A DNA stretch of 63,273 nt, the filler included, from Octopus bimaculoides (lineage: Eukaryota), in the NCBI RefSeq assembly GCF_001194135.2. It is 4 parts of 4 records of this genome, joined end to end, with 100 filler letters (N's around TTAATTAATTAA, not from the genome) between each part and the next. Parts side by side here need not be neighbours in the genome. Positions count along the whole stretch, not along the records: positions 1 to 26,788 come from NC_068997.1; 3 more parts are not named here. One strand, given 5' to 3'. Shown here in pieces: positions 1,115 to 37,800 of this stretch; position 1 is the stretch's first letter; the number at the start of each line of letters is the position of its first letter. The notes below the pieces were generated by a model. That model had not been told where the DNA came from. It saw only the letters and a list, made by a program, of their open reading frames with translations, and did no database searches. A program made the translations under genes and the position numbers.

Positions 1115-1525
1115 TCATCTTAGGTGGAGGATTGCTGAAATTTCTGCTCTTCACATGCTTGACTTAAATCCTTCCATGGTTAACTTTGCTTTTTGTTCTT
1201 TCGGGGTTGATAAAATAAAATACCTGTCAAGTACTAGGGTCAATATAATCAATTGACCCCTTCCTCGTAAAATTGCTGGTCTGGTGTCATCTTCAGAAAG
1301 AATTATTATTGTTATTATCAAGTGATGGAACTGGCAAAATTTTTAGTATGCTAGACAAAATGCTTAGCAGCATCTTGTCTGTTAAAATTCCACCAAGGTC
1401 AACTTTGCCTTTCATCCTTTTGGAATCAATAAAATAAGTACCAGTCAAGTACTAGAGTTGATGTAATTGACTTTTCTCTCCCCTCAAAAACTGCTGGCCC
1501 TATGCCAAAATTTGAACTCATTGTT
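1115..1525 (+). mobile_element. Two head-to-tail SINE family A copies
   Basis: Repeated aactttgc(c/t)ttt..cctt..ggg..gataaaataa..tacc core separated by (ATT)n. Confidence 0.7.
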
Positions 1526-1731
1526 ATTATTGTTATTAAATAATTATTAGCAACAGAAGCAATGTTAATCCCAAGAGGCAATCTTTATATCCAACTTAAT
1601 GTGGATGTTTTGTTAGAATGCCAAATACTGTGGTATTCACCTTGAGAGGACTTCTTAAATGGATGCATGGTGCATAAAAGCACATGTATTTATATTGCTG
1701 GCAGACAAAAATCATCTGCTATGAGTGCAGG

Positions 1732-1778
1732 AGCTGCCAGTTCATATGATTTTGGTATACATTTCTTCAGTGACAGCT
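1732..1778 (-). ncRNA. Type I hammerhead-like motif, unit 1 (core mutated)
   Basis: Minus strand: AGCUGUCA-CUGAAGA-aauguauacc-AAAA-UCAUAUGA-AC-UGGCAGCU. 8-bp helix I (7 WC + 1 GU) and palindromic helix III; G12>A and U16.1>A; helix II degraded. Confidence 0.55.
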
Positions 1779-2070
1779 GTCCATTAGCTGCATACCAACT
1801 AAATCTCACTGCAAATGATGTATAAAATTCCAGTGACTTTTGAGGCATTGATGTTGCAAATACACAGCAGGCTTATTAAAAAGTAATTATTAGTAATAGA
1901 AGCCATATTGATACCAAAAAGCAAGCTTTATGTCCATCTTAATGGGGATCTTTTGTTAGAATGCCACATATTGCTGTATTCACCTTGAGAAGACTTCTCA
2001 TATGGATGCGTAGTCCATAAAAGGGTAGATATTTATATCATTGGCAGATGAGAATCATTTATGGCACTGA

Positions 2071-2120
2071 AATTGCCAGATTACATGATTTCGATATACT
2101 GCATCTCCTCAGTGATAGCC
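2071..2120 (-). ncRNA. Type I hammerhead-like motif, unit 2 (core intact)
   Basis: Minus strand: GGCUAUCA-CUGAGGA-GAUG cagua UAUC-GAAA-UCAUGUAA-UC-UGGCAAUU. Full CUGANGA/GAAA/UH core, G10.1-C11.1 pair, 4-bp helix II, AUC triplet; helices I and III partly mismatched. Confidence 0.65.
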
Positions 2121-2770
2121 ACCAATTAGCTGTGTACCAGCCAAATCTTGCTGTCAATGATAAATAGAACTCCAGTGACTTCTGAGGCACTGATGTCACA
2201 AATAGCCAATAGGCTTATTAAAAATAATTATTTGCAACAGAAACAGTATTAATACCATGAGGCAGTCACATGATGTGGCTGTTCTGGTGCCCATAGCAAA
2301 ATACCCAGCCCGTGGTCACAACTGGCATACTTTTGATCACAAATCTGTCCAATCAAGATTAAACTGGAGCTAAATAACAAAAATACCAACCCAAACCAAA
2401 CCTGCCACACCCAAATATTTTCTTGCCAATTTCAATTTACTGAACATTAGACATTTTAATCTGTCTGAACATCAGTGGTGGTGGAGGTGGAGGATCTATG
2501 GTTGTCATGGTGACTGCACCCCTACTTCTTCCTCACTAAACCATACTCCCCCTATCATATATATGTATTTGATTATTATTTCTAGCTTTTATCTTTCTCT
2601 ACACCAACAATTTTAATTATTGGTGAGAACTAAAAAAATGTAATCTTCAAATTCTCATACTTCTCTTTAAATTTAATTAGTGAGCATTCCTATATATGCT
2701 AAGTAATATATACATTTTATGTGTATTTGTGGTGTGCATGTATGTGTTTTTTTTCTTTCTCTCTCTCACT

Positions 2771-2822
<52 letters not shown>

Positions 2823-3667
2823 TTCACTTTACAACCATGTGGCTTTAAATTTGGCCTCAATATGCCACACCTGAGGTAAATGTGTGTGTGTGAATATTCA
2901 CCATTTGAATGTCACCACTTGAGGAAAACAGTGATGTTGCTGATATTCTTTGTTGACATTGCAACCAGTTGCTCAGCACTTTTGAAAACCTGTGGAATTA
3001 AAAATATCTCTTACTTGAAAAACATGTAAAGATTGGTGACAGGAAGATTGTTAGAAAATTACTATTTTTAGATCTCACAATGAGAGATATTCAGCAACAG
3101 TACTTTGGAGTAAAGATTGTTTGCCATCATAACATGGCAAAGATGAATTAAGATGTTGTCGTTGTCAACGTTAGATGCAGTAAGAGATGATAGTAGCAAT
3201 ATTGGCAGTGAGAAAAATCATAGTGTTGTAATGTGGAGACAGCAAGCAAATGACTTCCTGGTGCAAATGCAAGCTAGACTCCCAAAATGGAGAAAAACTG
3301 GTCTATTTAAGGAAATTGCTGGGTTCCTTTGCGATCGGTAGAAACTCCAAGCAATTTAAAATATGACCTGGACTGTGATTACTAGCATGAATGTCAAACT
3401 TCAAAAAGTAGTTGACCAATGGTTTTAATAAATTTATACAAAAAAGTAAGCATTATACTGTCCAGCATAAATAAAAAACAACTTCATTATATTTTTCTGT
3501 AAAAACCTATTCTGACATTGAATGAGTCAACTTCCTGTATGTCATTTTTCAATAAAATGAATTTCTAAACAAAATTCTGGGAACGATCTACTCACGTAAT
3601 TTACACCCCACCTAAAGTTTATTTTTGTTTTTGCAAAAAAAGTGCATAAATTACATGGGTTTTTATG

Positions 3668-5470: not shown

Positions 5471-6634
5471 TACACTTATGATGAGTAAAAATAGAGAAAA
5501 AAAGAAATGTTCCAGCTTTGATCTTCCCATTTATTTTCAGACAGTCTGTCTAGGACTGCATTATCTAATGTTTGCCAGGTTTTTTAAGATGGTAAGATGT
5601 GGTTTAAGGAGTGTTTGGCTACTATTTCTGGCAGGTTAAATGACCATGTACATGCTTTTACAGTTGTAATGTGTTGAAGGAATTTTTGAAGAGTTTTTTT
5701 TTTTACCATATCTGCCTCAAATGATGCCAGCCACTAACTAAAACTAAAATATTCTCAGAATATTGTCCTTTGGGAAGCAGCATCTACATTCCTGACCTCG
5801 TAAATTCTTTATTTTTGATTCCATATGAACCAAAACTCATTAGTCTTATGGCTATGTGCATGTGTGTCTGTATGTGTAGAGATGTGTGTGTGTGTGTGCA
5901 TGTAGATATGTTTCTATATGTATAAGTGTGTGAGAAGACATGTGTGTCTGTATGTAAATATATGTGGCTGCATGTGTAGATATATGTACCTGTATATAGA
6001 TGTGCAACTCTGTGTAAATGTGTTTATAGATGCTAATGTGTGTGTGTGTGAATGATTTCTTTATTATGCATGTGTATATATATGTTTGTAGTTGTGTGTG
6101 CATTATGTAGTATGTGTTTTATACAAGTCTGTATGTATGTATGTATGTGTATGTATTCAATTGTAGATGTATGTATGAGTGTGTGTGTAAATATATATGA
6201 TTTTGCATATATGCATAGCTAGGTACTTGAATTTATGTATGAATATATGTATGTAAATATATGTTTGTGTGCATACATATATGTATATATACTTATATGT
6301 ATCTATGTTATGTGTATGTATACATAGCATGTATGTATGTATGTGTGTGTGCAGCGTATATATATATATATATATATANNNNNNNNNNNNNNNNNNNNNN
6401 NNNNNNNNNNNNNNNNNNNNNNNNNNNNNNNNNNNNNNNNNNNNNNNNNNNNNNNNNNNNNNNNNNNNNNNNNNNNNNNNNNNNNNNNNNNNNNNNNNNN
6501 NNNNNNNNNNNNNNNNNNNNNNNNNNNNNNNNNNNNNNNNNNNNNNNNNNNNNNNNNNNNNNNNNNNNNNNNNNNNNNNNNNNNNNNNNNNNNNNNNNNN
6601 NNNNNNNNNNNACACACACATGATGGGCTTATTT

Positions 6635-7875: not shown

Positions 7876-8853
7876 NNNNNNNNNNNNNNNNNNNNNNNNN
7901 NNNNNNNNNNNNNNNNNNNNNNNNNNNNNNNNNNNNNNNNNNNNNNNNNNNNNNNNNNNNNNNNNNNNNNNNNNNNNNNNNNNNNNNNNNNNNNNNNNNN
8001 NNNNNNNNNNNNNNNNNNNNNNNNNNNNNNNNNNNNNNNNNNNNNNNNNNNNNNNNNNNNNNNNNNNNNNNNNNNNNNNNNNNNNNNNNNNNNNNNNNNN
8101 NNNNNNNNNNNNNNNNNNNNNNNNNNNNNNNNNNNNNNNNNNNNNNNNNNNNNNNNNNNNNNNNNNNNNNNNNNNNNNNNNNNNNNNNNNNNNNNNNNNN
8201 NNNNNNNNNNNNNNNNNNNNNNNNNNNNNNNNNNNNNNATTTCGAGAACAGCTTTCTCCCTCTCTTTCTCTCTCTCCCTCTCTCCCTCTCCCCGCCTCTC
8301 TCTCTCTCCCTATCTTTCTCTCTCTCTCTCATTTCTTAGTGACACCTTCAACAATGGAAACAAATCTCTTCAATCAGTCAGTTGTTATTCATGTTACTAC
8401 TGTTGTTGTTCTTGTTATTGAGGTTGCTGCTGATCAAAGCCATTTAGCCATGATCATCCCAGCTTATATGTAAACAATGTTATCCAGTCCTATTATGTCA
8501 GTTGTGTGTTCTCTTCTCTAAGACATTCAGGTGTGGTTTGAGAGGAATTTGGCTGTTTTTTCTAGTACACCATGTGACCCTGTATAAGGTCTGTCTGTTA
8601 CTCTTCATAAGTCCCCAGGTCATTCCTGATCCATGCCCTATGCTTAAAGACATTCCAACTACGACTATCCTGTCTTTTTCCTGTCTGCAGGGAAACCAGG
8701 ACTGTATTCTCCAATGTAGGCTTTTCTAAAACAGAGGGAGATTTCTTTACTATTTCTAGCTGGTTAAATGACCAAATAGTAACTCTTTCATTGGTCCATT
8801 TCTGCTAATAGTTTTTGTGTTGTTGCCTTTTGTTCTTTTTTCTCTCTACCTGT

Positions 8854-14311: not shown

Positions 14312-16299
14312 ATATATATATATATATAAACACGCACACACACACATAAATACAGGTTTATCAAATACTATACAACATAAATCATTTATGGAAACTATCT
14401 CTGCCTCTAAAAAATGTATCATAATTACCAAATGGCAATTGAAACCAGCTCCACTTTAAAAGGGGAGATAATCTCAAGTTTCAAAAATTCTCCAAAGTTA
14501 ACATACCATTAAGGAAAAGGTTAGGTTTATCGCCTGGAAATAAGAGGGCAGTTGTAGACATGTGTTTCTGGCTCAATAGCCATCGTCAGTATGGTAATTT
14601 GCCCAGCCTTATCTCCAATAGCCATTGTGACCATCCTAAATCCATTTACACCAATAGACAATAATAACTAACATTTTAGGTATTTGTACATTGAAGCAGA
14701 AGTAATAGCAATCTTTCAAAATTAATCTTCTTCTAAAAGAATTTCAGTCAAGTTTGTATATATCCCATAAGGTAGTAGGCGTGCTACTACCCATATTTAT
14801 ACACACATACTAAGAAGCTATTCTAATATGCTTCTGATATTTTAAATTAGGACTCACAATGAAACTTAACACTCCTACCCAGTCAGCTAATATCCTCCTA
14901 ATCTTATAGATATGACAAATACCTGTTTTACCTTTTAGTCATGAACAGCTAAAGGTGACTCAGAATAAGCTGTCAACTTTTAATATTATATAGACATAAA
15001 AAGCAAAATGCAGAGCAGTGTTTCAGCTTTATGTTCTGAGTTCAAATCCCTCTGAAGTCAACTTCGCTTTTCATCCTTTCAGGGTAACTTAAAATATATA
15101 TCAGTTGAGCACTAGGATCAATGTAACTGATTAGCCTGTCCCCTAAAAAGTGTCAAACCTTACCTTATGCCTATAGTAGAAAGACTATATATCATGAAGC
15201 AGAAGGCAACTATACTCCTGTTGGTACCATGATGAAATAATGTAAGGAAGGGTAGCTAGCCATACATACATACATACATATTATTTATACACACACACAC
15301 ACATGGCTGATGCTAGTGCTGGTGGCATGTAAAAAGCACCATTCAAATGTGACCGATGCCAGTGCCACCTGACTGACACCCATGCTGGTGGTACATGAGG
15401 GTGGTTGATGCCAATCCTGCTGGACTGTCTCCCATGCCAGTAGCATGTAAAAAGCACCTGCTACACTCTCAGAGTAGTTGGCATTAGGCAGGGCATCCAG
15501 CTACAGAAACCTTGCCAAATCAGATTGGAGCCTGGTGCAGCCTCTTGGCTTGTCAGTCCTCAGTCAAAGTGTCCAACCCATGCCAGCATGGAAAGTGGAC
15601 ATTAAATGACAACGATATTGATGATTATATATAAGCAAAGCAGACTGAAATTTGAAAGAAGTAAGAAAAAAAACTAAAGATCTAAATACATTAGCATTTT
15701 GTTTCATAGTTATCTTAGCATATAATGAAATTAAATCCTTTAAATTTTTCTTTATTTTCATTATTTTTTTCCTTTTTATTTTCCTTGATTGGTGGGTTAG
15801 GGTAAAAAAAAAAATGAAAAAGGTGAGATTGGTTCTTCACTTACTATGTTGACCATTATTCTTCCAGTTGACCCATATTTGATGTTTTTGTTATTGTTAC
15901 CATCTGTGTTTCTTTGCAGACAGTTCACATCACCAATAACCCTTCTCGCAATATCTGATGTTGTTGTCAGCATGTCAAACAGATTAATACTAGTAGTTTC
16001 ACCATTTTAGAAGAAAAACTGTTTTTAATGAATTTACAATTCACTTGCATGAACTTTCCTTTACTACACCGCTCTCTTTTCCCCCCTCTTTCTTTCCCCC
16101 CTCTCTCTTTCCCCTCTCTCTCTCTAGTTAAAACTTCCTTTTGACATCAAGTCTCTCTCTTTTTCCTTGGCCCCTCTTTTTCTCTCTTTATATTTCTTTC
16201 ATTCTATCTTTCTCTCTACCCTATGGCAATTTCTTTCCCTTTCACTCTCACTAAACCATTATTTTCCACTTTTCTCTATCTCATATACTGTCCCTCATT

Positions 16300-19349: not shown

Positions 19350-19755
19350 GGTTAAAATGTAGTAACATAGTTTTTTATAGAACAGCCATGATATAGTGGC
19401 AAAAAAGTGTTACCGTCTAGTATTGTTACTACTTAGTCCTTGTTTAGAGATTTTAGAACTAGCTACATTGCTTATTACGAGACTAGCGGCTTTCTGCCGC
19501 TTCTCTGTTTGAGTAGGGATGATTGAGTGCCATCTCTAGCAGGCAGGTGTCTAGTACCAATGAAGGGTAAAGACCCAGAAACCATGGTCTACTGGTCTTG
19601 CCAAGCTGGAGGGGAGTGATTCACTCCCTTACTTACAATACATCAAACACAGGTTGTGTGTTGTTAAGCAGCCGGAAAAGATGTTTTCCTGGGGTTAAAA
19701 TGTAGTAACATAGTTCTTTATAGAACAGTCATGTTATAGTGGTAAAAAAATGTTA

Positions 19756-20271: not shown

Positions 20272-21538
20272 GCGTGGAACAACAGCTTTTGTAGTTTCTT
20301 GGATCCTCATCTATATTATAATTCAGACTTGTAAACTGTTATCCTCAACTGATTATTTGGTGTGCCTGGCGAAGCTAAATCGAACGTTAATCCGCCCTCA
20401 TAATGTCCACAGTTGGCAGTCTATCCACGACCGACGGAGAGATGTACTGTTGTATTCGGCTCACTACCGGCCCCTGGGAGACAGTCGTGCTGTTCACATC
20501 CTGGCTGTTGGCACAGGAATTCCTCAGGAACTTATTTGTCTTCTTTGGTATGCTGACTCTTTCTTTCCAGATGTGATAAAAGCAACCACTTTGAACCATG
20601 ATGTTGATGAAGTAAAGAAAGGGCGAATAGTTGAGCAGTTTTTCTTCACTTGTGCATGTAACTCAACCCAACCACCAATTTATGTGTCCTTGACGGGTCC
20701 ACGATGTTCAGTGCCGACAACTTTCCTTCAGGTACAGGTGCCACAAAAAGAGGAACCTGTGAAAGAGTTTGGTATCTGCATGTCGAGTACGAATGTCAAT
20801 GTCCATCCATATCACATCATAGAATGGATGGAAGCTCATCAGATGTTTGGCATCGACGAGATAACACTGTATTATCACACTTTTTCCAGCAACATGTCAC
20901 GGGTGTTAAACCAGTATCAGAAAGATGGCTTTGTTAGGCTTAATTATGTGTCAGTTCCCAGACGATATGGATTCTGGTCAGACTTTAAAATCATATCTTC
21001 TTTATCGCTCAATGACTGTATGTGGAAAAATATGTATCGATATCACTACATTTTCATTCTGTTAAACTTTGATGAGATTGTCATACCACGTATACACAAC
21101 AACTATAGCGCGTTACTCGACTATGTCGATCGAACTGAAGGGCTTGTGGTGCCAGCCACATCATACCTTTTCCAAAATACTGTTTTCAATCTTTGCGCTG
21201 CTGATACAAAAGATCCTGCATTTTCAAACTTTCTCCGCTACTTGAAGCGAGATCCTCCTAGTGAAGAAATGCGAGATTTCCGTTCTCTCGTCAATCCCAG
21301 ATACTGTCTTTCATTGTTTACGCATTATTGTCATTCATTTGTCTCGGTGGAAGCAATGCCATGGACAGTGAAAGTCCATCAGCACGTTGCTCTCACGCAT
21401 CACTATCATAATGTCAACAAAAAAAAAGTCAACTGTGATAACATGAAGAAGAATTTGGCTGTGGACAGAACGGTGGATCGCTTCCGCAAACCTCTTAGTA
21501 AACGGTGTGAAAATCGAATAATGCAGCACAAGCTTTAA
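20272..21538 (+). CDS. Glycosyltransferase family 92 (DUF23; galt-1-like beta-1,4-galactosyltransferase), main coding exon
   Basis: Strong pyrimidine tract + AG at 20270-20271; frame open from the acceptor through a TM segment to TAA 21536-21538. Family motifs LYSAHY, FGICM, IIEWMEAHQMFGIDEITLY, LNDCMWKNMYRY, xFDEIVIP, RSLVNP, THHY. Confidence 0.93.
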
Positions 21539-23276: not shown

Positions 23277-24560
23277 GGCGGCGAGCTAGCAGAATCGTTA
23301 GCACACTGGGCAAAATGCTTAGTGGCATTTCGTCTGTCCTTATGTTCTGAGTTCAAATTCCACCAAGGTCGATTTTGTCCTTCGTTCTTTCAAGGTCAAT
23401 AAAATGAGCTCCAGTTGAATATTGGAGTCGATGTAATCGACTCCCCCAACGCCTCAGAATTCAGGCGTTATATCTATAGCAGAAAGGATTATTATTAAGA
23501 TGGTAAGCTGGGAGAATCGTTAGGGTGTTGGAAAAGGTGGTTTTGTGGTATTTCATGCAGCTCTTTAAGTCCTGAATTCAAATTCCACTGAAGTCAGCTT
23601 TGCCTTTCATTCTTTTGGGATTGGTAAATAAGTACCTGTCAAGTATTAGAGTTGATATAATCAAATAGTTCACTCCCCTAAAATTGCTAGCCTTGGGTCA
23701 AAGTTTTAAAGGATTATTATTAGAGCGGTCAATTGGCAGATTGTTAGTGTTGGAAAAAATTGCTCTGTAATATTTATTGCAGCTCTTTGATTTTGAGTTC
23801 ATATCTAACAAAGGTTGATTTTTGCATTCCATCCCTCTTGTGTCAATACAATAAATTACCAGCCATGTAGTAGAGTCGATGTAATTGCTGGCCTTCTGCC
23901 TAAATTAGAAACTATTGTTATAGGTGACAAGCTGACTGAATTATTAAGATATCAGAAAAAATGCCTTGCAATATTTGTTCTGGCTCTGTATATTCTGAGT
24001 TCAAATCCCTATTGAGTTGATAAAACTTAGTACCAGTAAAATAATGGAGTCAATATAATCAACTAAATTTCTTGCTTGAAAATCACTAGCCTTTCATCCC
24101 TTTGTAATTGATGAAATAAGTACCAGTTACACGCTGAGGTTGATGTAACCGATTCGTCCCTCTCCCAAATTTCAGGCCTTCGTCCTATAGTAGAAAGGAT
24201 AGTTATTATCATTATTAAGGTGACAAGCTGGCAAAATTGTTAGTACATCAGACAAAATGCTTAGTGGCATTTCTTCTGATTCTGTATGTCCAGAGTTCAA
24301 ATTCTGCTGAGGTCGACTTTGCTTTTCATCCCTTTGGGGTCCATAAAATAAGTACCAGTTGATCACTGGGGTTGATGTAATCGACTAACACCATCCCTTT
24401 AAAATTATGGCCTTGTGCCTAAATTTGAAACTGCTGAGGTCAACTTTGCCTTTCATCCTTTCGGGGTCAATAAATTAAGTACCAGTGAAATACTGGGGTC
24501 GATGTAATTGGCTAGTCCCCTCCTCCCAAATTTCAGGCCTTGTGCCTTTAGTAGAAATGA
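22440..24560 (+). mobile_element. Head-to-tail array of about 10 SINE family A copies or fragments
   Basis: Core ggtc.actttgcctttc.tccttt.gggg repeats every ~150-250 bp in the same orientation, joined by (ATT)n; best-preserved copies at 23080-23490. Confidence 0.85.
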
Positions 24561-36694: not shown

Positions 36695-37315
36695 CATTTA
36701 GGTGTATATATGTAAGTATAATTATGTATGTTAGAAACACTAGATCTTTATTTTCTGCTTTTATTGTCGCTAGAAGAAATTGATTGAGAAAAACTTTGTC
36801 TGGAAAACTCTTTTTCTTGCAAATTACAGTCTNNNNNNNNNNNNNNNNNNNNNNNNNNNNNNNNNNNNNNNNNNNNNNNNNNNNNNNNNNNNNNNNNNNN
36901 NNNNNNNNNNNNNNNNNNNNNNNNNNNNNNNNNNNNNNNNNNNNNNNNNNNNNNNNNNNNNNNNNNNNNNNNNNNNNNNNNNNNNNNNNNNNNNNNNNNN
37001 NNNNNNNNNNNNNNNNNNNNNNNNNNNNNNNNNNNNNNNNNNNNNNNNNNNNNNNNNNNNNNNNNNNNNNNNNNNNNNNNNNNNNNNNNNNNNNNNNNNN
37101 NNNNNNNNNNNNNNNNNNNNNNNNNNNNNNNNNNNNNNNNNNNNNNNNNNNGTGTGTGTGTGTGACTGTGTGGTAAGAAGCTTGCTTCCCAACCACATGG
37201 TTCCGAGTTCAGTCCCACTGCGTAACACCTTGGGCAAGTGTCTTCAACTATAGCCTCGGGGCGACCAAAGCCTTGTGAGTTGATTTGGTAGATGAAAGCT
37301 GAAAGAAACTCGTCG

Positions 37316-37346
<31 letters not shown>

Positions 37347-37399
37347 ATTATGTATGTATCTGTATATCTTAAATTTGTTTACAGGAAACGTTTTGGATA

Positions 37400-37800
37400 T
37401 GAAACATTGCTTTTAATGATCTTATGCGTTCGCAGAATTTCCTTCAGTTTTGGGTCTTTATGGAGTGTTGGGAGATTTTGAACAATGATGTAAAATATCT
37501 CGTTGTTTCTGGGGTTGTATGTGGATGCATAAGCTAGTATTTTCAGAGTATGTGTGTTATTGTGTTCGGCTGTTCGAATGATGGCTTAGCCGGGCGAAAC
37601 TTCGAAGTCACTATCAATACTATTTGAGACTGATGAGCGTTTTAGTTCAGGCACTGCCGATAATGTCATGCAATGGATTAACAAACATCAATATTTGAGC
37701 GCATTCTCATTGAATTCAACATCTATTGCCATCTTTGTACCGTAATCTTTATCGTTAAAGCATTCTCCTTTAAAGAATCTAGTGATGCGAGGGCCGGTGA
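37400..37800 (-). mobile_element. Degenerate Penelope-like retroelement ORF fragment
   Basis: Minus-frame peptides CFNDKDYGTKMA (cf. FNxxxYxQxxGxxMGxKMAP, with a deletion) and STYNPRNNEIFYIIVQNLPTL, interrupted by stops; assignment from memory. Confidence 0.4.

What the first reader, a model, noticed from the sequence alone, without database searches (positions are those of the whole stretch)
1541..2268. Retrozyme-like tandem repeat: ~342-bp units, each with a Type I hammerhead, one with an intact core
Seen: a diverged ~342-bp tandem repeat with a hammerhead fold at the same offset in both full units (minus strand). Unit 2 (2071-2120) has the full CUGAGGA/GAAA/UC core and a G-C-closed helix II. 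Unit 1 (1732-1778) has an 8-bp helix I and palindromic UCAUAUGA but two core mutations. The two copies decayed at different positions, so together they reconstruct a canonical ancestor with a 10-nt palindromic helix III (AUCAUAUGAU). Established: non-LTR retrozymes and ribozyme satellites in other animals are tandem units of a few hundred nt with minimal Type I hammerheads; palindromic helix III permits dimeric folding, and the monomers form circular RNAs. Inference: this is a relic or low-activity member of an octopus retrozyme family. I know of no description of this family but cannot check the literature.
Basis: partly seen in the sequence, partly recalled or inferred. Interest (0 to 1): 0.85.

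Follow-up and report, generated by a model that had tools for sequence, protein, structure and literature searches.

The report
Dead hammerhead-like tandem repeat in octopus
An old two-copy 342-bp tandem repeat in an intron of an Octopus bimaculoides gene carries one sequence that fits the minimal hammerhead-ribozyme pattern; it may be the decayed remnant of a retrozyme-type mobile repeat, but it is evolving neutrally, is not recognised by curated ribozyme models, and no other copies could be found.

Summary
The tandem repeat is real: 342-343 bp period, 2.1 copies (about 1530-2267), with units 77.5% identical. The window is Octopus bimaculoides. The array lies in an intron of a GT92 glycosyltransferase gene, and the hammerhead-like motif is antisense to that gene. 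O. vulgaris has both units, so the duplication predates the species split.

Unit 2 (2071-2120, minus strand) has an exact CUGAGGA/GAAA/UC core in type I order. Rfam gives no hammerhead hit, even at E<=10 on 81 nt. A covariance model built only from validated coral, mussel and axolotl retrozyme hammerheads scores unit 2 at 14 bits, third-best in the 64-kb locus. Chance yields this level about 0.03 times per 26 kb.

In favour: parsimony using O. vulgaris gives an ancestral unit 2 with better helices I and III, and the layout matches validated retrozyme hammerheads. Against: the hammerhead segment is the least conserved part of the unit, O. vulgaris has lost G8, there is no covariation, and no other family copy was found.

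Verdict: plausibly (about 0.5) a dead relic of a retrozyme or Penelope-derived repeat, otherwise a chance motif. It is not an active element.

The parts
1541..1882 (.). Tandem repeat unit 1 (342 bp). Homology to the end of a unit may extend left to about 1530, into the (ATT/GTT)n tail of a SINE.
   Evidence: present in O. vulgaris at 93.3% identity
1883..2224 (.). Tandem repeat unit 2 (342 bp), 77.5% identical to unit 1.
   Evidence: O. vulgaris ortholog is 92.2% identical and has a 17-bp insertion
2225..2267 (.). Partial third unit (first ~43-46 bp of the unit). 42 bp of it are absent in O. vulgaris.
2071..2120 (-). Hammerhead-like motif of unit 2, type I order. Helix I 5' strand 2120-2113; CUGAGGA 2112-2106; helix II hairpin 2105-2093; GAAA 2092-2089; helix III 2089-2080; C17 at 2079 (predicted cleavage between 2079 and 2078); helix I 3' strand 2078-2071.
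   Evidence: Exact core; helices of 3 (6 of 8), 4 and 2 pairs. Custom covariance model 14.0 bits. No Rfam hit.
1732..1778 (-). Degenerate homologous copy in unit 1. CUGAAGA is intact, with G12>A, U16.1>A, a broken helix II, a loop 2 three nt shorter, and an 8-bp helix I that is derived in O. bimaculoides.
   Evidence: (8.1 bits)
1520..1538 (+). (ATTGTTATT)n microsatellite tail of the upstream SINE-like element. The array begins directly at it.

Best explanation
The array is an ancient, now inert, 2.1-copy tandem repeat of a 342-bp unit. It lies in an intron of the O. bimaculoides GT92 gene, antisense to it. It most likely descends from a hammerhead-bearing repeat of the animal non-LTR retrozyme or Penelope-pLTR kind. 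The inferred original mechanism, taken from the known family and not shown here, runs in five steps. (1) A multimeric minus-strand transcript formed a type I hammerhead in each unit. (2) The palindromic helix III let two ribozymes pair as a dimer. (3) Cleavage after C17 released about 342-nt monomers. (4) A host ligase circularised the monomers. (5) A Penelope-like reverse transcriptase copied the circles into tandem cDNA that integrated, here at an (ATT)n microsatellite. What is shown: the array existed before the O. bimaculoides/O. vulgaris split. Unit 1 had already lost G12, U16.1 and helix II by then. Unit 2 still had an intact core with helices of 5+2, 4 and 3 pairs at the split. Since then each species has damaged it, with two helix pairs lost in O. 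bimaculoides and G8>A plus U1.1>A in O. vulgaris. All of this happened at the neutral rate. Today the locus cannot release a monomer, because only one cleavage site is intact.
For: Exact CUGAGGA/GAAA/UC core with three helices in type I order. It is the only such site in 26.8 kb and in the 64-kb locus, with a chance rate of 0.01-0.08 per 26 kb. The layout matches the validated coral, mussel and axolotl retrozyme hammerheads printed in PMC7229834. Shared features are UCA/UGG at the base of helix I with the same U.G pair, a 13-nt helix II hairpin, and a palindromic helix III between GAAA and UC. A model built only from those sequences ranks the two reader sites first and second within the array (14.0 bits with E about 1e-3 on 801 bp, and 8.1 bits). 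The unit length of 342 bp falls within the 150-450 bp of animal retrozymes, and mussel units are 350-390 bp. Both O. bimaculoides-specific substitutions in the motif (columns 5 and 39 of A5) turn ancestral G-C pairs into A.C. The parsimony ancestor of unit 2 is therefore a clearly better hammerhead, at a level expected by chance 5e-4 times per 26 kb and 1.4e-5 times per array. My estimate is that this favours a real ancestor about 20-fold. Octopus genomes carry Penelope-like elements, with an expansion at JC distance about 0.2 (PMC13282606). The unit 1-unit 2 JC distance of 0.27 is 3.5 times the between-species distance, which puts the array in a comparable age range. The lack of a hammerhead-shaped minimum-energy fold or of a strong fold z-score does not count against this, because validated retrozymes behave the same way.
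Against: No Rfam hammerhead family reports either site, even at E<=10 on 81 nt. Only 1 of 4 unit copies across two species has a complete core. The hammerhead segment is the least conserved part of the unit between units and between species. There is no covariation: 0 double changes, and 410 of 500 shuffles pair equally well. No other copy of the unit was found in 131 kb of octopus DNA, in a six-frame protein search, or in two metagenome scans, so the hallmark of a mobile family is missing. Unrelated single-copy sites in the same loci score as high or higher with the custom model (19.4 and 15.7 bits in L002; 19.5, 18.2 and 15.1 in L001). No target-site duplication was found. The ancestral inference rests on two substitutions.
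Confidence: 0.5

Rival explanations
1. Ordinary old segmental tandem duplication of intronic DNA, for example by unequal exchange between 46-bp direct repeats, which gives R-S-R-S-R = 2.13 copies. One copy happens to match the short hammerhead consensus. No ribozyme was ever there.
For: The present-day match is weak: 3 contiguous helix I pairs, an A-U/G.U-rich helix II, and a mismatched helix III. About 0.03 such sites are expected per 26 kb, or roughly 3,000 per genome. Curated Rfam models see nothing. The custom model gives equal or better scores at unrelated sites. The array is a single locus with no family. There is no conservation of the motif, no covariation and no target-site duplication. 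The array evolves at the same rate as the surrounding intron. The 'same offset' point and part of the 'canonical ancestor' (the 8-bp helix I) are artefacts of homology and of picking the best state from each copy.
Against: The ancestor of unit 2 inferred with O. vulgaris is a markedly better hammerhead than either living copy. Chance gives that level about 1.4e-5 times per array. The detailed layout coincides with validated retrozyme hammerheads, and the unit length falls in the retrozyme range. All four unit 1/unit 2 differences at constrained positions have the hammerhead state in unit 2.
Confidence: 0.42
2. A still-active, low-activity hammerhead or retrozyme. The O. bimaculoides unit 2 motif self-cleaves, possibly as a dimer, and the locus yields a circular RNA.
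For: The unit 2 core is intact, with a G10.1-C11.1 closing pair. The motif's minimum free energy of -5.8 kcal/mol just passes the -5 kcal/mol cut-off that the 2026 preprint uses for 'active' hammerheads.
Against: A unit-length monomer needs two cleavage sites, and the neighbouring site lacks G12, U16.1 and helix II in both species. The O. vulgaris ortholog has lost the essential G8. The motif evolves faster than its flanks. Helix I has two mismatches and two G.U pairs among its 8 positions. The motif is antisense within an intron. The locus fails the preprint's rule of at least two consecutive complete hammerheads.
Confidence: 0.05

Closest known systems
Animal non-LTR retrozymes (Cervera and de la Pena 2020, PMC7229834), especially the Mytilus galloprovincialis 350-390-bp family
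   Same: Tandem units of a few hundred bp (342 here) with low GC. A type I hammerhead layout with ...GUCA CUGANGA, a 4-bp helix II with a 5-nt loop (13 nt), GAAA, a palindromic helix III, then C|UGGC. The host is also a mollusc.
   Different: Only one unit has a complete core and only 2.1 copies are present. No dispersed family, no expression data and no target-site duplication were found. Helix II is A-U/G.U-rich rather than G-C-rich. There is no sequence similarity outside the motif. The array evolves neutrally and is degraded in both species.
Minimal type I hammerheads in pseudo-LTRs of Penelope-like elements (Cervera and de la Pena 2014; Arkhipova 2021, PMC8557442; Li et al. 2026 preprint)
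   Same: A short or palindromic helix III implies dimeric action. The motif sits in direct repeats of a few hundred bp. The array starts at a microsatellite, a reported PLE target preference. Penelope-like elements are present in Octopus.
   Different: No reverse transcriptase or GIY-YIG ORF lies nearby. The only RT fragments in the fetched loci are LINE-type. No octopus pLTR sequence was available for comparison.
Rfam Hammerhead_1 (RF00163) and related hammerhead families
   Same: Same core consensus and helix order.
   Different: Neither site reaches even E<=10 against any Rfam family on an 81-nt or 1-kb query, far below gathering score.

Membership tests
Hammerhead ribozyme, type I | Conserved catalytic core CUGANGA ... 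GAAA ... UH | tested here: inconclusive
   Met exactly in O. bimaculoides unit 2 only. Not met in unit 1 of either species (A12, A16.1) or in O. vulgaris unit 2 (G8>A).
Hammerhead ribozyme, type I | Three helices around the core, with helix I open and helices II and III closed | tested here: inconclusive
   Unit 2 has helix I with 3 contiguous pairs (6 of 8, with two A.C-type mismatches), helix II with 4 bp including a G.U, and helix III with 2 bp plus a C.A mismatch. The inferred ancestor has 5+2, 4 and 3 pairs. No covariation.
Hammerhead ribozyme, type I | Match to the curated covariance model at gathering score (Rfam RF00163/RF00008 clan) | tested here: not met
   No hit at gathering score, nor at E<=10 on 1 kb or on 81 nt.
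Hammerhead ribozyme, type I | Self-cleavage after H17 | not testable with these tools
   Needs in vitro transcription.
Animal non-LTR retrozyme | Head-to-tail tandem units of about 150-450 bp | tested here: met
   342-343 bp period and 2.13 copies. The size range is from PMC7229834.
Animal non-LTR retrozyme | A complete type I hammerhead in consecutive units (at least 2 for an 'active' element, Li et al. 2026) | tested here: not met
   One complete motif only.
Animal non-LTR retrozyme | Multi-copy family dispersed in the genome | tested here: inconclusive
   No other copy in the window or in 2 x 65 kb of O. bimaculoides and O. vulgaris. None in the six-frame protein search or in metagenome scans. 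Whole octopus genomes could not be searched.
Animal non-LTR retrozyme | Low GC content (<50%) | tested here: met
   36-37% GC, about the same as the whole piece, so this is uninformative.
Animal non-LTR retrozyme | Highly self-paired unit RNA | tested here: inconclusive
   Circular-fold z-scores are -0.1 and +0.2 for living units and -1.2 and +0.9 for inferred ancestors. Validated controls give only -1.0 (mussel), -1.7 (axolotl) and -3.0 (coral).
Animal non-LTR retrozyme | Expression as unit-length linear and circular RNA | not testable with these tools
   No transcriptome access.
Animal non-LTR retrozyme | Target-site duplication (optional in the family) | tested here: not met
   No direct repeat of 7 nt or more across the array borders.
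Animal non-LTR retrozyme | Co-occurrence with Penelope-like elements in the host genome | tested here: met
   Literature only. O. vulgaris has 31 recently active PLE families and an older PLE expansion (PMC13282606). None lies in the fetched loci.

The most novel reading that the evidence does not exclude
Octopus genomes harbour, or harboured until tens of millions of years ago, an undescribed family of about 340-nt type I hammerhead retrozymes mobilised by Penelope-like elements. This intronic array is one decayed insertion of that family. Intact members elsewhere may still produce circular RNAs in cephalopod tissues.
Probability: 0.25. Interest if true: 0.5.

Novelty: new member of a known kind. 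Interest (0 to 1): 0.3.

Why it matters
If the relic reading is right, it would be the first pointer to hammerhead or retrozyme-type repeats in cephalopods. The papers I could search describe such repeats in corals, mussels, salamanders and other groups, but none in cephalopods. It would also tie them to the Penelope-like elements that expanded in Octopus. Such a family could be a source of abundant circular RNAs in an animal known for unusual RNA biology. The locus itself, however, is dead and evolving neutrally. Its only value is as a lead for a genome-wide search. If that search finds nothing, this is an ordinary intronic duplication with a chance motif.

Tried and rejected
(1) Protein-coding or transposase origin of the unit. 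From memory I noticed resemblances to a mariner C-terminus ('KVIISN...') and to an Hsmar1-like terminal repeat ('AAAAGTAATT'). The two fall on the same bases, so they exclude each other. There is no inverted repeat. Six-frame translations hit nothing in Pfam, the PDB or the 5.8-billion-protein collection. Rejected.

(2) Thermodynamic tests. The hammerhead fold is not the minimum-energy fold, and the z-scores are not significant. I first read this as negative evidence. Validated coral, mussel and axolotl sequences behave the same way, so I dropped the criterion.

It is very rare under column shuffling (1 in 40,000 at 8/4/3 pairs). O. vulgaris shows, however, that the 8-bp helix I is derived, so that number overstates the case. 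I replaced it with the parsimony ancestor of unit 2.

(4) Concerted evolution between units. There are 51 unit-grouping sites against 1 species-grouping site. Rejected.

(5) Finding more copies. Two metagenome pattern scans found nothing. A LINE reverse-transcriptase query, meant to fetch many octopus loci for sampling, returned only one Octopus protein, so I abandoned it.

(6) Enrichment of hammerhead-like sites in octopus DNA. The custom model gives 3 hits of at least 14 bits per 64 kb against about 0.1 expected. Exact and near-exact descriptors show no excess beyond the array itself, and Rfam reports none of the sites. The model's calibration is rough, so I left this unresolved.

Full report
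WHAT IS THERE. Positions about 1530/1541-2267 hold a direct tandem repeat with a 342-343-bp period. There are two full units (1541-1882 and 1883-2224) and the first 43-46 bp of a third. The full units differ at 76 of 338 aligned sites plus 8 gap columns, giving 77.5% identity with transitions to transversions at 57:19. TRF did not report the array, because it lies below TRF's identity range. No other copy exists in the 26.8-kb piece.

THE TWO MOTIFS. On the minus strand, unit 2 reads GGCUAUCA CUGAGGA GAUGCAGUAUAUC GAAA UCAUGUAAU C UGGCAAUU (2120 to 2071). Unit 1 reads AGCUGUCA CUGAAGA AAUGUAUACC AAAA UCAUAUGAA C UGGCAGCU (1778 to 1732). Unit 2 has the full core and a G-C-closed helix II. Unit 1 has an 8-bp helix I and two core changes. 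Its helix I has three contiguous pairs followed by two A.C-type mismatches, and its helix III has a C.A mismatch.

IS IT MORE THAN CHANCE? A descriptor requiring the exact core and three helices finds unit 2 as the only site in the piece, and later as the only site in the 64-kb locus. Dinucleotide shuffles give 0.08 such sites per 26 kb at helices of at least 3/3/1 pairs, and 0.011 at 3/4/2. A Markov simulation conditioned on the observed 24 CUGANGA heptamers gives 0.027 per 26 kb and 7e-4 per 684-bp array at 3/4/2. The motif is thus unusual for one window, but a 2.8-Gb genome should contain thousands by chance. That both units show it 'at the same offset' follows from their homology.

CURATED AND CUSTOM MODELS. 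Rfam 15 reports no hammerhead, and nothing else credible. This holds at gathering score on the whole piece, at E<=10 on 1 kb and at E<=10 on 81 nt around unit 2. I then built a covariance model (R1) only from the three validated retrozyme hammerheads that aligned cleanly. These are coral Amil224, mussel Mg353 and axolotl Ax353, all from the supplement of PMC7229834. Unit 2 scores 14.0 bits (E about 1e-3 on 801 bp) and unit 1 scores 8.1 bits. Over the full 64-kb O. bimaculoides locus, unit 2 ranks third with E = 0.1, behind unrelated sites of 19.4 and 15.7 bits. In O. vulgaris the orthologous unit 2 scores only 8.8 bits. Rfam does not report the higher-scoring sites either. The three-sequence model is therefore not very specific, and its calibration is rough.

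IDENTITY AND ORTHOLOG. The 393-aa ORF at 20357-21538 is the last exon of a GT92 (PF01697) protein. That protein is found with identical sequence in O. vulgaris and O. bimaculoides. The window is 100% identical to O. bimaculoides CM046617.1 (L002). The array lies inside the roughly 45-kb gene range, that is, in an intron. The hammerhead-like strand is antisense to the gene.

AGE OF THE ARRAY. O. vulgaris (L001) has both units at the orthologous place, at 93.3% and 92.2% identity. It has a 17-bp insertion in unit 2 and a 42-bp deletion in the partial third unit. The duplication therefore predates the species split. The JC distance is 0.267 between units and 0.07-0.08 between species. There are 51 sites that group by unit and 1 that groups by species, so there has been no gene conversion.

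NO CONSTRAINT ON THE MOTIF. Between species the hammerhead segments are 83% (unit 1) and 90% (unit 2) identical. The rest of the units is 91-96% identical. Between units the hammerhead segment is the least conserved part (58-73% vs 85%). For comparison, the GT92 exon has 12 differences in 1182 nt and no amino-acid change. The motif has not been under constraint since the split.

ANCESTRAL STATES. In the four-sequence alignment (A5), O. vulgaris unit 2 reads GGCUGUCA CUGAGAA GAUGCAGUAUGUC GAAA UCAUGUGAU C AGGCAAUU. I used unit 1 as the outgroup. The two O. bimaculoides-specific changes (columns 5 and 39) each converted a G-C pair into A.C, one in helix I and one in helix III. The two O. vulgaris-specific changes destroyed G8 and the 1.1-2.1 pair. 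The ancestor of unit 2 at the split therefore had an intact core. Its helix I had 5 contiguous pairs, then a C.A mismatch, then 2 further pairs. Its helix II had 4 pairs. Its helix III had 3 pairs within AUCAUGUGAU, which is fully self-complementary as a dimer if G.U pairs are allowed. Chance gives this level 5e-4 times per 26 kb and 1.4e-5 times per array. Given two substitutions, the probability that reverting both restores pairs is about 0.008 if the motif is a chance match, and about 0.15 if it is a decaying real hammerhead. This is my own estimate, and it gives roughly 20-fold support for a real ancestor.

LIMITS OF THE ANCESTRAL ARGUMENT. The very small probability of the best-of-two mosaic (1 in 40,000 column shuffles) therefore overstates the case. 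The pair counts show no double (compensatory) change relative to the commonest pair. Shuffled partners pair equally well in 410 of 500 trials.

COMPARISON WITH KNOWN ELEMENTS. Animal non-LTR retrozymes are 150-450-bp tandem repeats, each unit with a type I hammerhead. They have low GC and are expressed as circular RNAs. Mussel units are 350-390 bp. A 2026 preprint derives them from Penelope pseudo-LTRs and defines active ones as having at least two consecutive complete hammerheads. The validated hammerheads share a detailed layout with the octopus motif. The mussel sequence is GAGCGUCA CUGAUGA GUCUUUUGUAGAC GAAA CGCGCGU C UGGCGUAU. The octopus ancestor is GGCUGUCA CUGAGGA GAUGCAGUAUAUC GAAA UCAUGUGAU C UGGCAAUU. 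Validated hammerheads also fail to fold into the hammerhead shape as their minimum-energy structure. Whole validated retrozymes have modest circular-fold z-scores of -1.0, -1.7 and -3.0, against -0.1 to -1.2 here. My early negative folding results therefore carry no weight. O. vulgaris has Penelope-like elements with an old expansion and recently active families. I found no paper describing hammerheads or retrozymes in cephalopods.

WHAT IS MISSING. There is no evidence of a family. No further copy appears in 131 kb of octopus DNA, in a six-frame protein search or in two metagenome scans. I could not search whole octopus genomes. An attempt to sample more loci through LINE proteins yielded only one Octopus protein. 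There is no target-site duplication. The six-frame translations have no Pfam or PDB relatives.

WEIGHING. Four points favour a real but dead hammerhead repeat: the exact core, the retrozyme-like layout and unit size, the improved ancestor, and the presence of Penelope-like elements in the host. Four points favour a chance motif: the silence of the curated models, one intact copy out of four, equal or better custom-model scores at unrelated sites, and the absence of any family. I put the relic reading at about 0.5, an ordinary duplication with a chance motif at about 0.4, and present-day activity at no more than 0.05. One intact site cannot release a unit-length RNA, and O. vulgaris has lost G8.

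MECHANISM. What follows is inferred from the known family, not shown here. A multimeric minus-strand transcript formed a hammerhead in each unit. Palindromic helix III allowed the ribozymes to act as dimers. Cleavage after C17 released about 342-nt monomers. A host ligase circularised them. A Penelope-like reverse transcriptase copied the circles into tandem cDNA, which inserted at the (ATT)n tail of a SINE. The array has decayed neutrally for at least the time since the O. bimaculoides/O. vulgaris split.

Noticed in passing
window 14556-14590 (-); ortholog L001 48480-48514: A second hammerhead-like site: CCAUA CUGACGA UGGCUAUUGAGCCA GAAA CACAUGU C UACAAC. It has an intact core, a 5-bp helix II and a 3-bp helix III, but helix I has only 2 bp. 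It scores 19.4 bits with the custom model, above the array candidate, and 15.1 bits in O. vulgaris. It is single-copy in the fetched loci, and Rfam reports nothing.
   Followed up: partly
window 19549-19597 (+) (= L002 52439-52487): A third hammerhead-shaped site: GUCUAGUA CCAAUGA AGGGUAAAGACCCA GAAA CCAUGGU C UACUGGUC. It has good helices I, II and III and a palindromic helix III, but the CUGA box reads CCAA. It scores 15.7 bits. It could be another decayed relic or chance.
   Followed up: no
L001 37045-37671 (O. vulgaris, about 1 kb downstream of the array); O. bimaculoides has the single-copy version at window ~3006-3139: An O. vulgaris-specific rearrangement. Direct (37045-37168 = 37399-37521) and inverted (37101-37252 = reverse complement of 37520-37671) duplications of host sequence flank a ~146-bp insert. 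The insert carries UCUGUG CUGAUGA ...GAAA UCAUGAU A CACAGA (19.5 bits), with a 6-bp helix I, a palindromic helix III resembling the array's, and a poor helix II.
   Followed up: partly
L001 18382-18444 (-) and 18573-18627 (+): An inverted pair of similar sequences beginning UCACUGAUGAG.UU.GUUAAU, about 190 bp apart. They are hammerhead-like by the custom model (12.1 and 18.2 bits), but position 17 is G in the better copy. They may be the terminal repeats of a small element.
   Followed up: no
window 1166-1320, 1385-1538, 24304-24547: SINE-like repeats (GGTCAACTTTGCCTTTCATCC...GTCGATAAAATAAGTACCAG...) with (ATT)n tails, here as adjacent pairs 219 bp and 127 bp apart. Dozens of related copies occur in both 65-kb loci. 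The tandem array starts exactly at the tail of the second one.
   Followed up: partly
window 20357-21538 (+): The last exon of a GT92 glycosyltransferase-domain gene (PF01697; 482-aa protein). Across the 393 aa of this exon there is no amino-acid change between O. bimaculoides and O. vulgaris, with 12 differences in 1182 nt. The intronic array differs by 7-8%.
   Followed up: yes
L002 10871-11622 and L001 11759-12115 (outside the window, same intron): A frameshifted LINE-type reverse transcriptase fragment (RVT_1 plus a PHD-like finger in its relatives). Its closest database relatives include sequences labelled as bacterial (Herbaspirillum MAG, E. coli) at 74-75% identity. These look like animal DNA contamination in those records.
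   Followed up: no
window 6379-6611 and 7876-8238: Runs of N (assembly gaps, 606 N in total) flanked by microsatellites. ORFs listed across them are artefacts.
   Followed up: no
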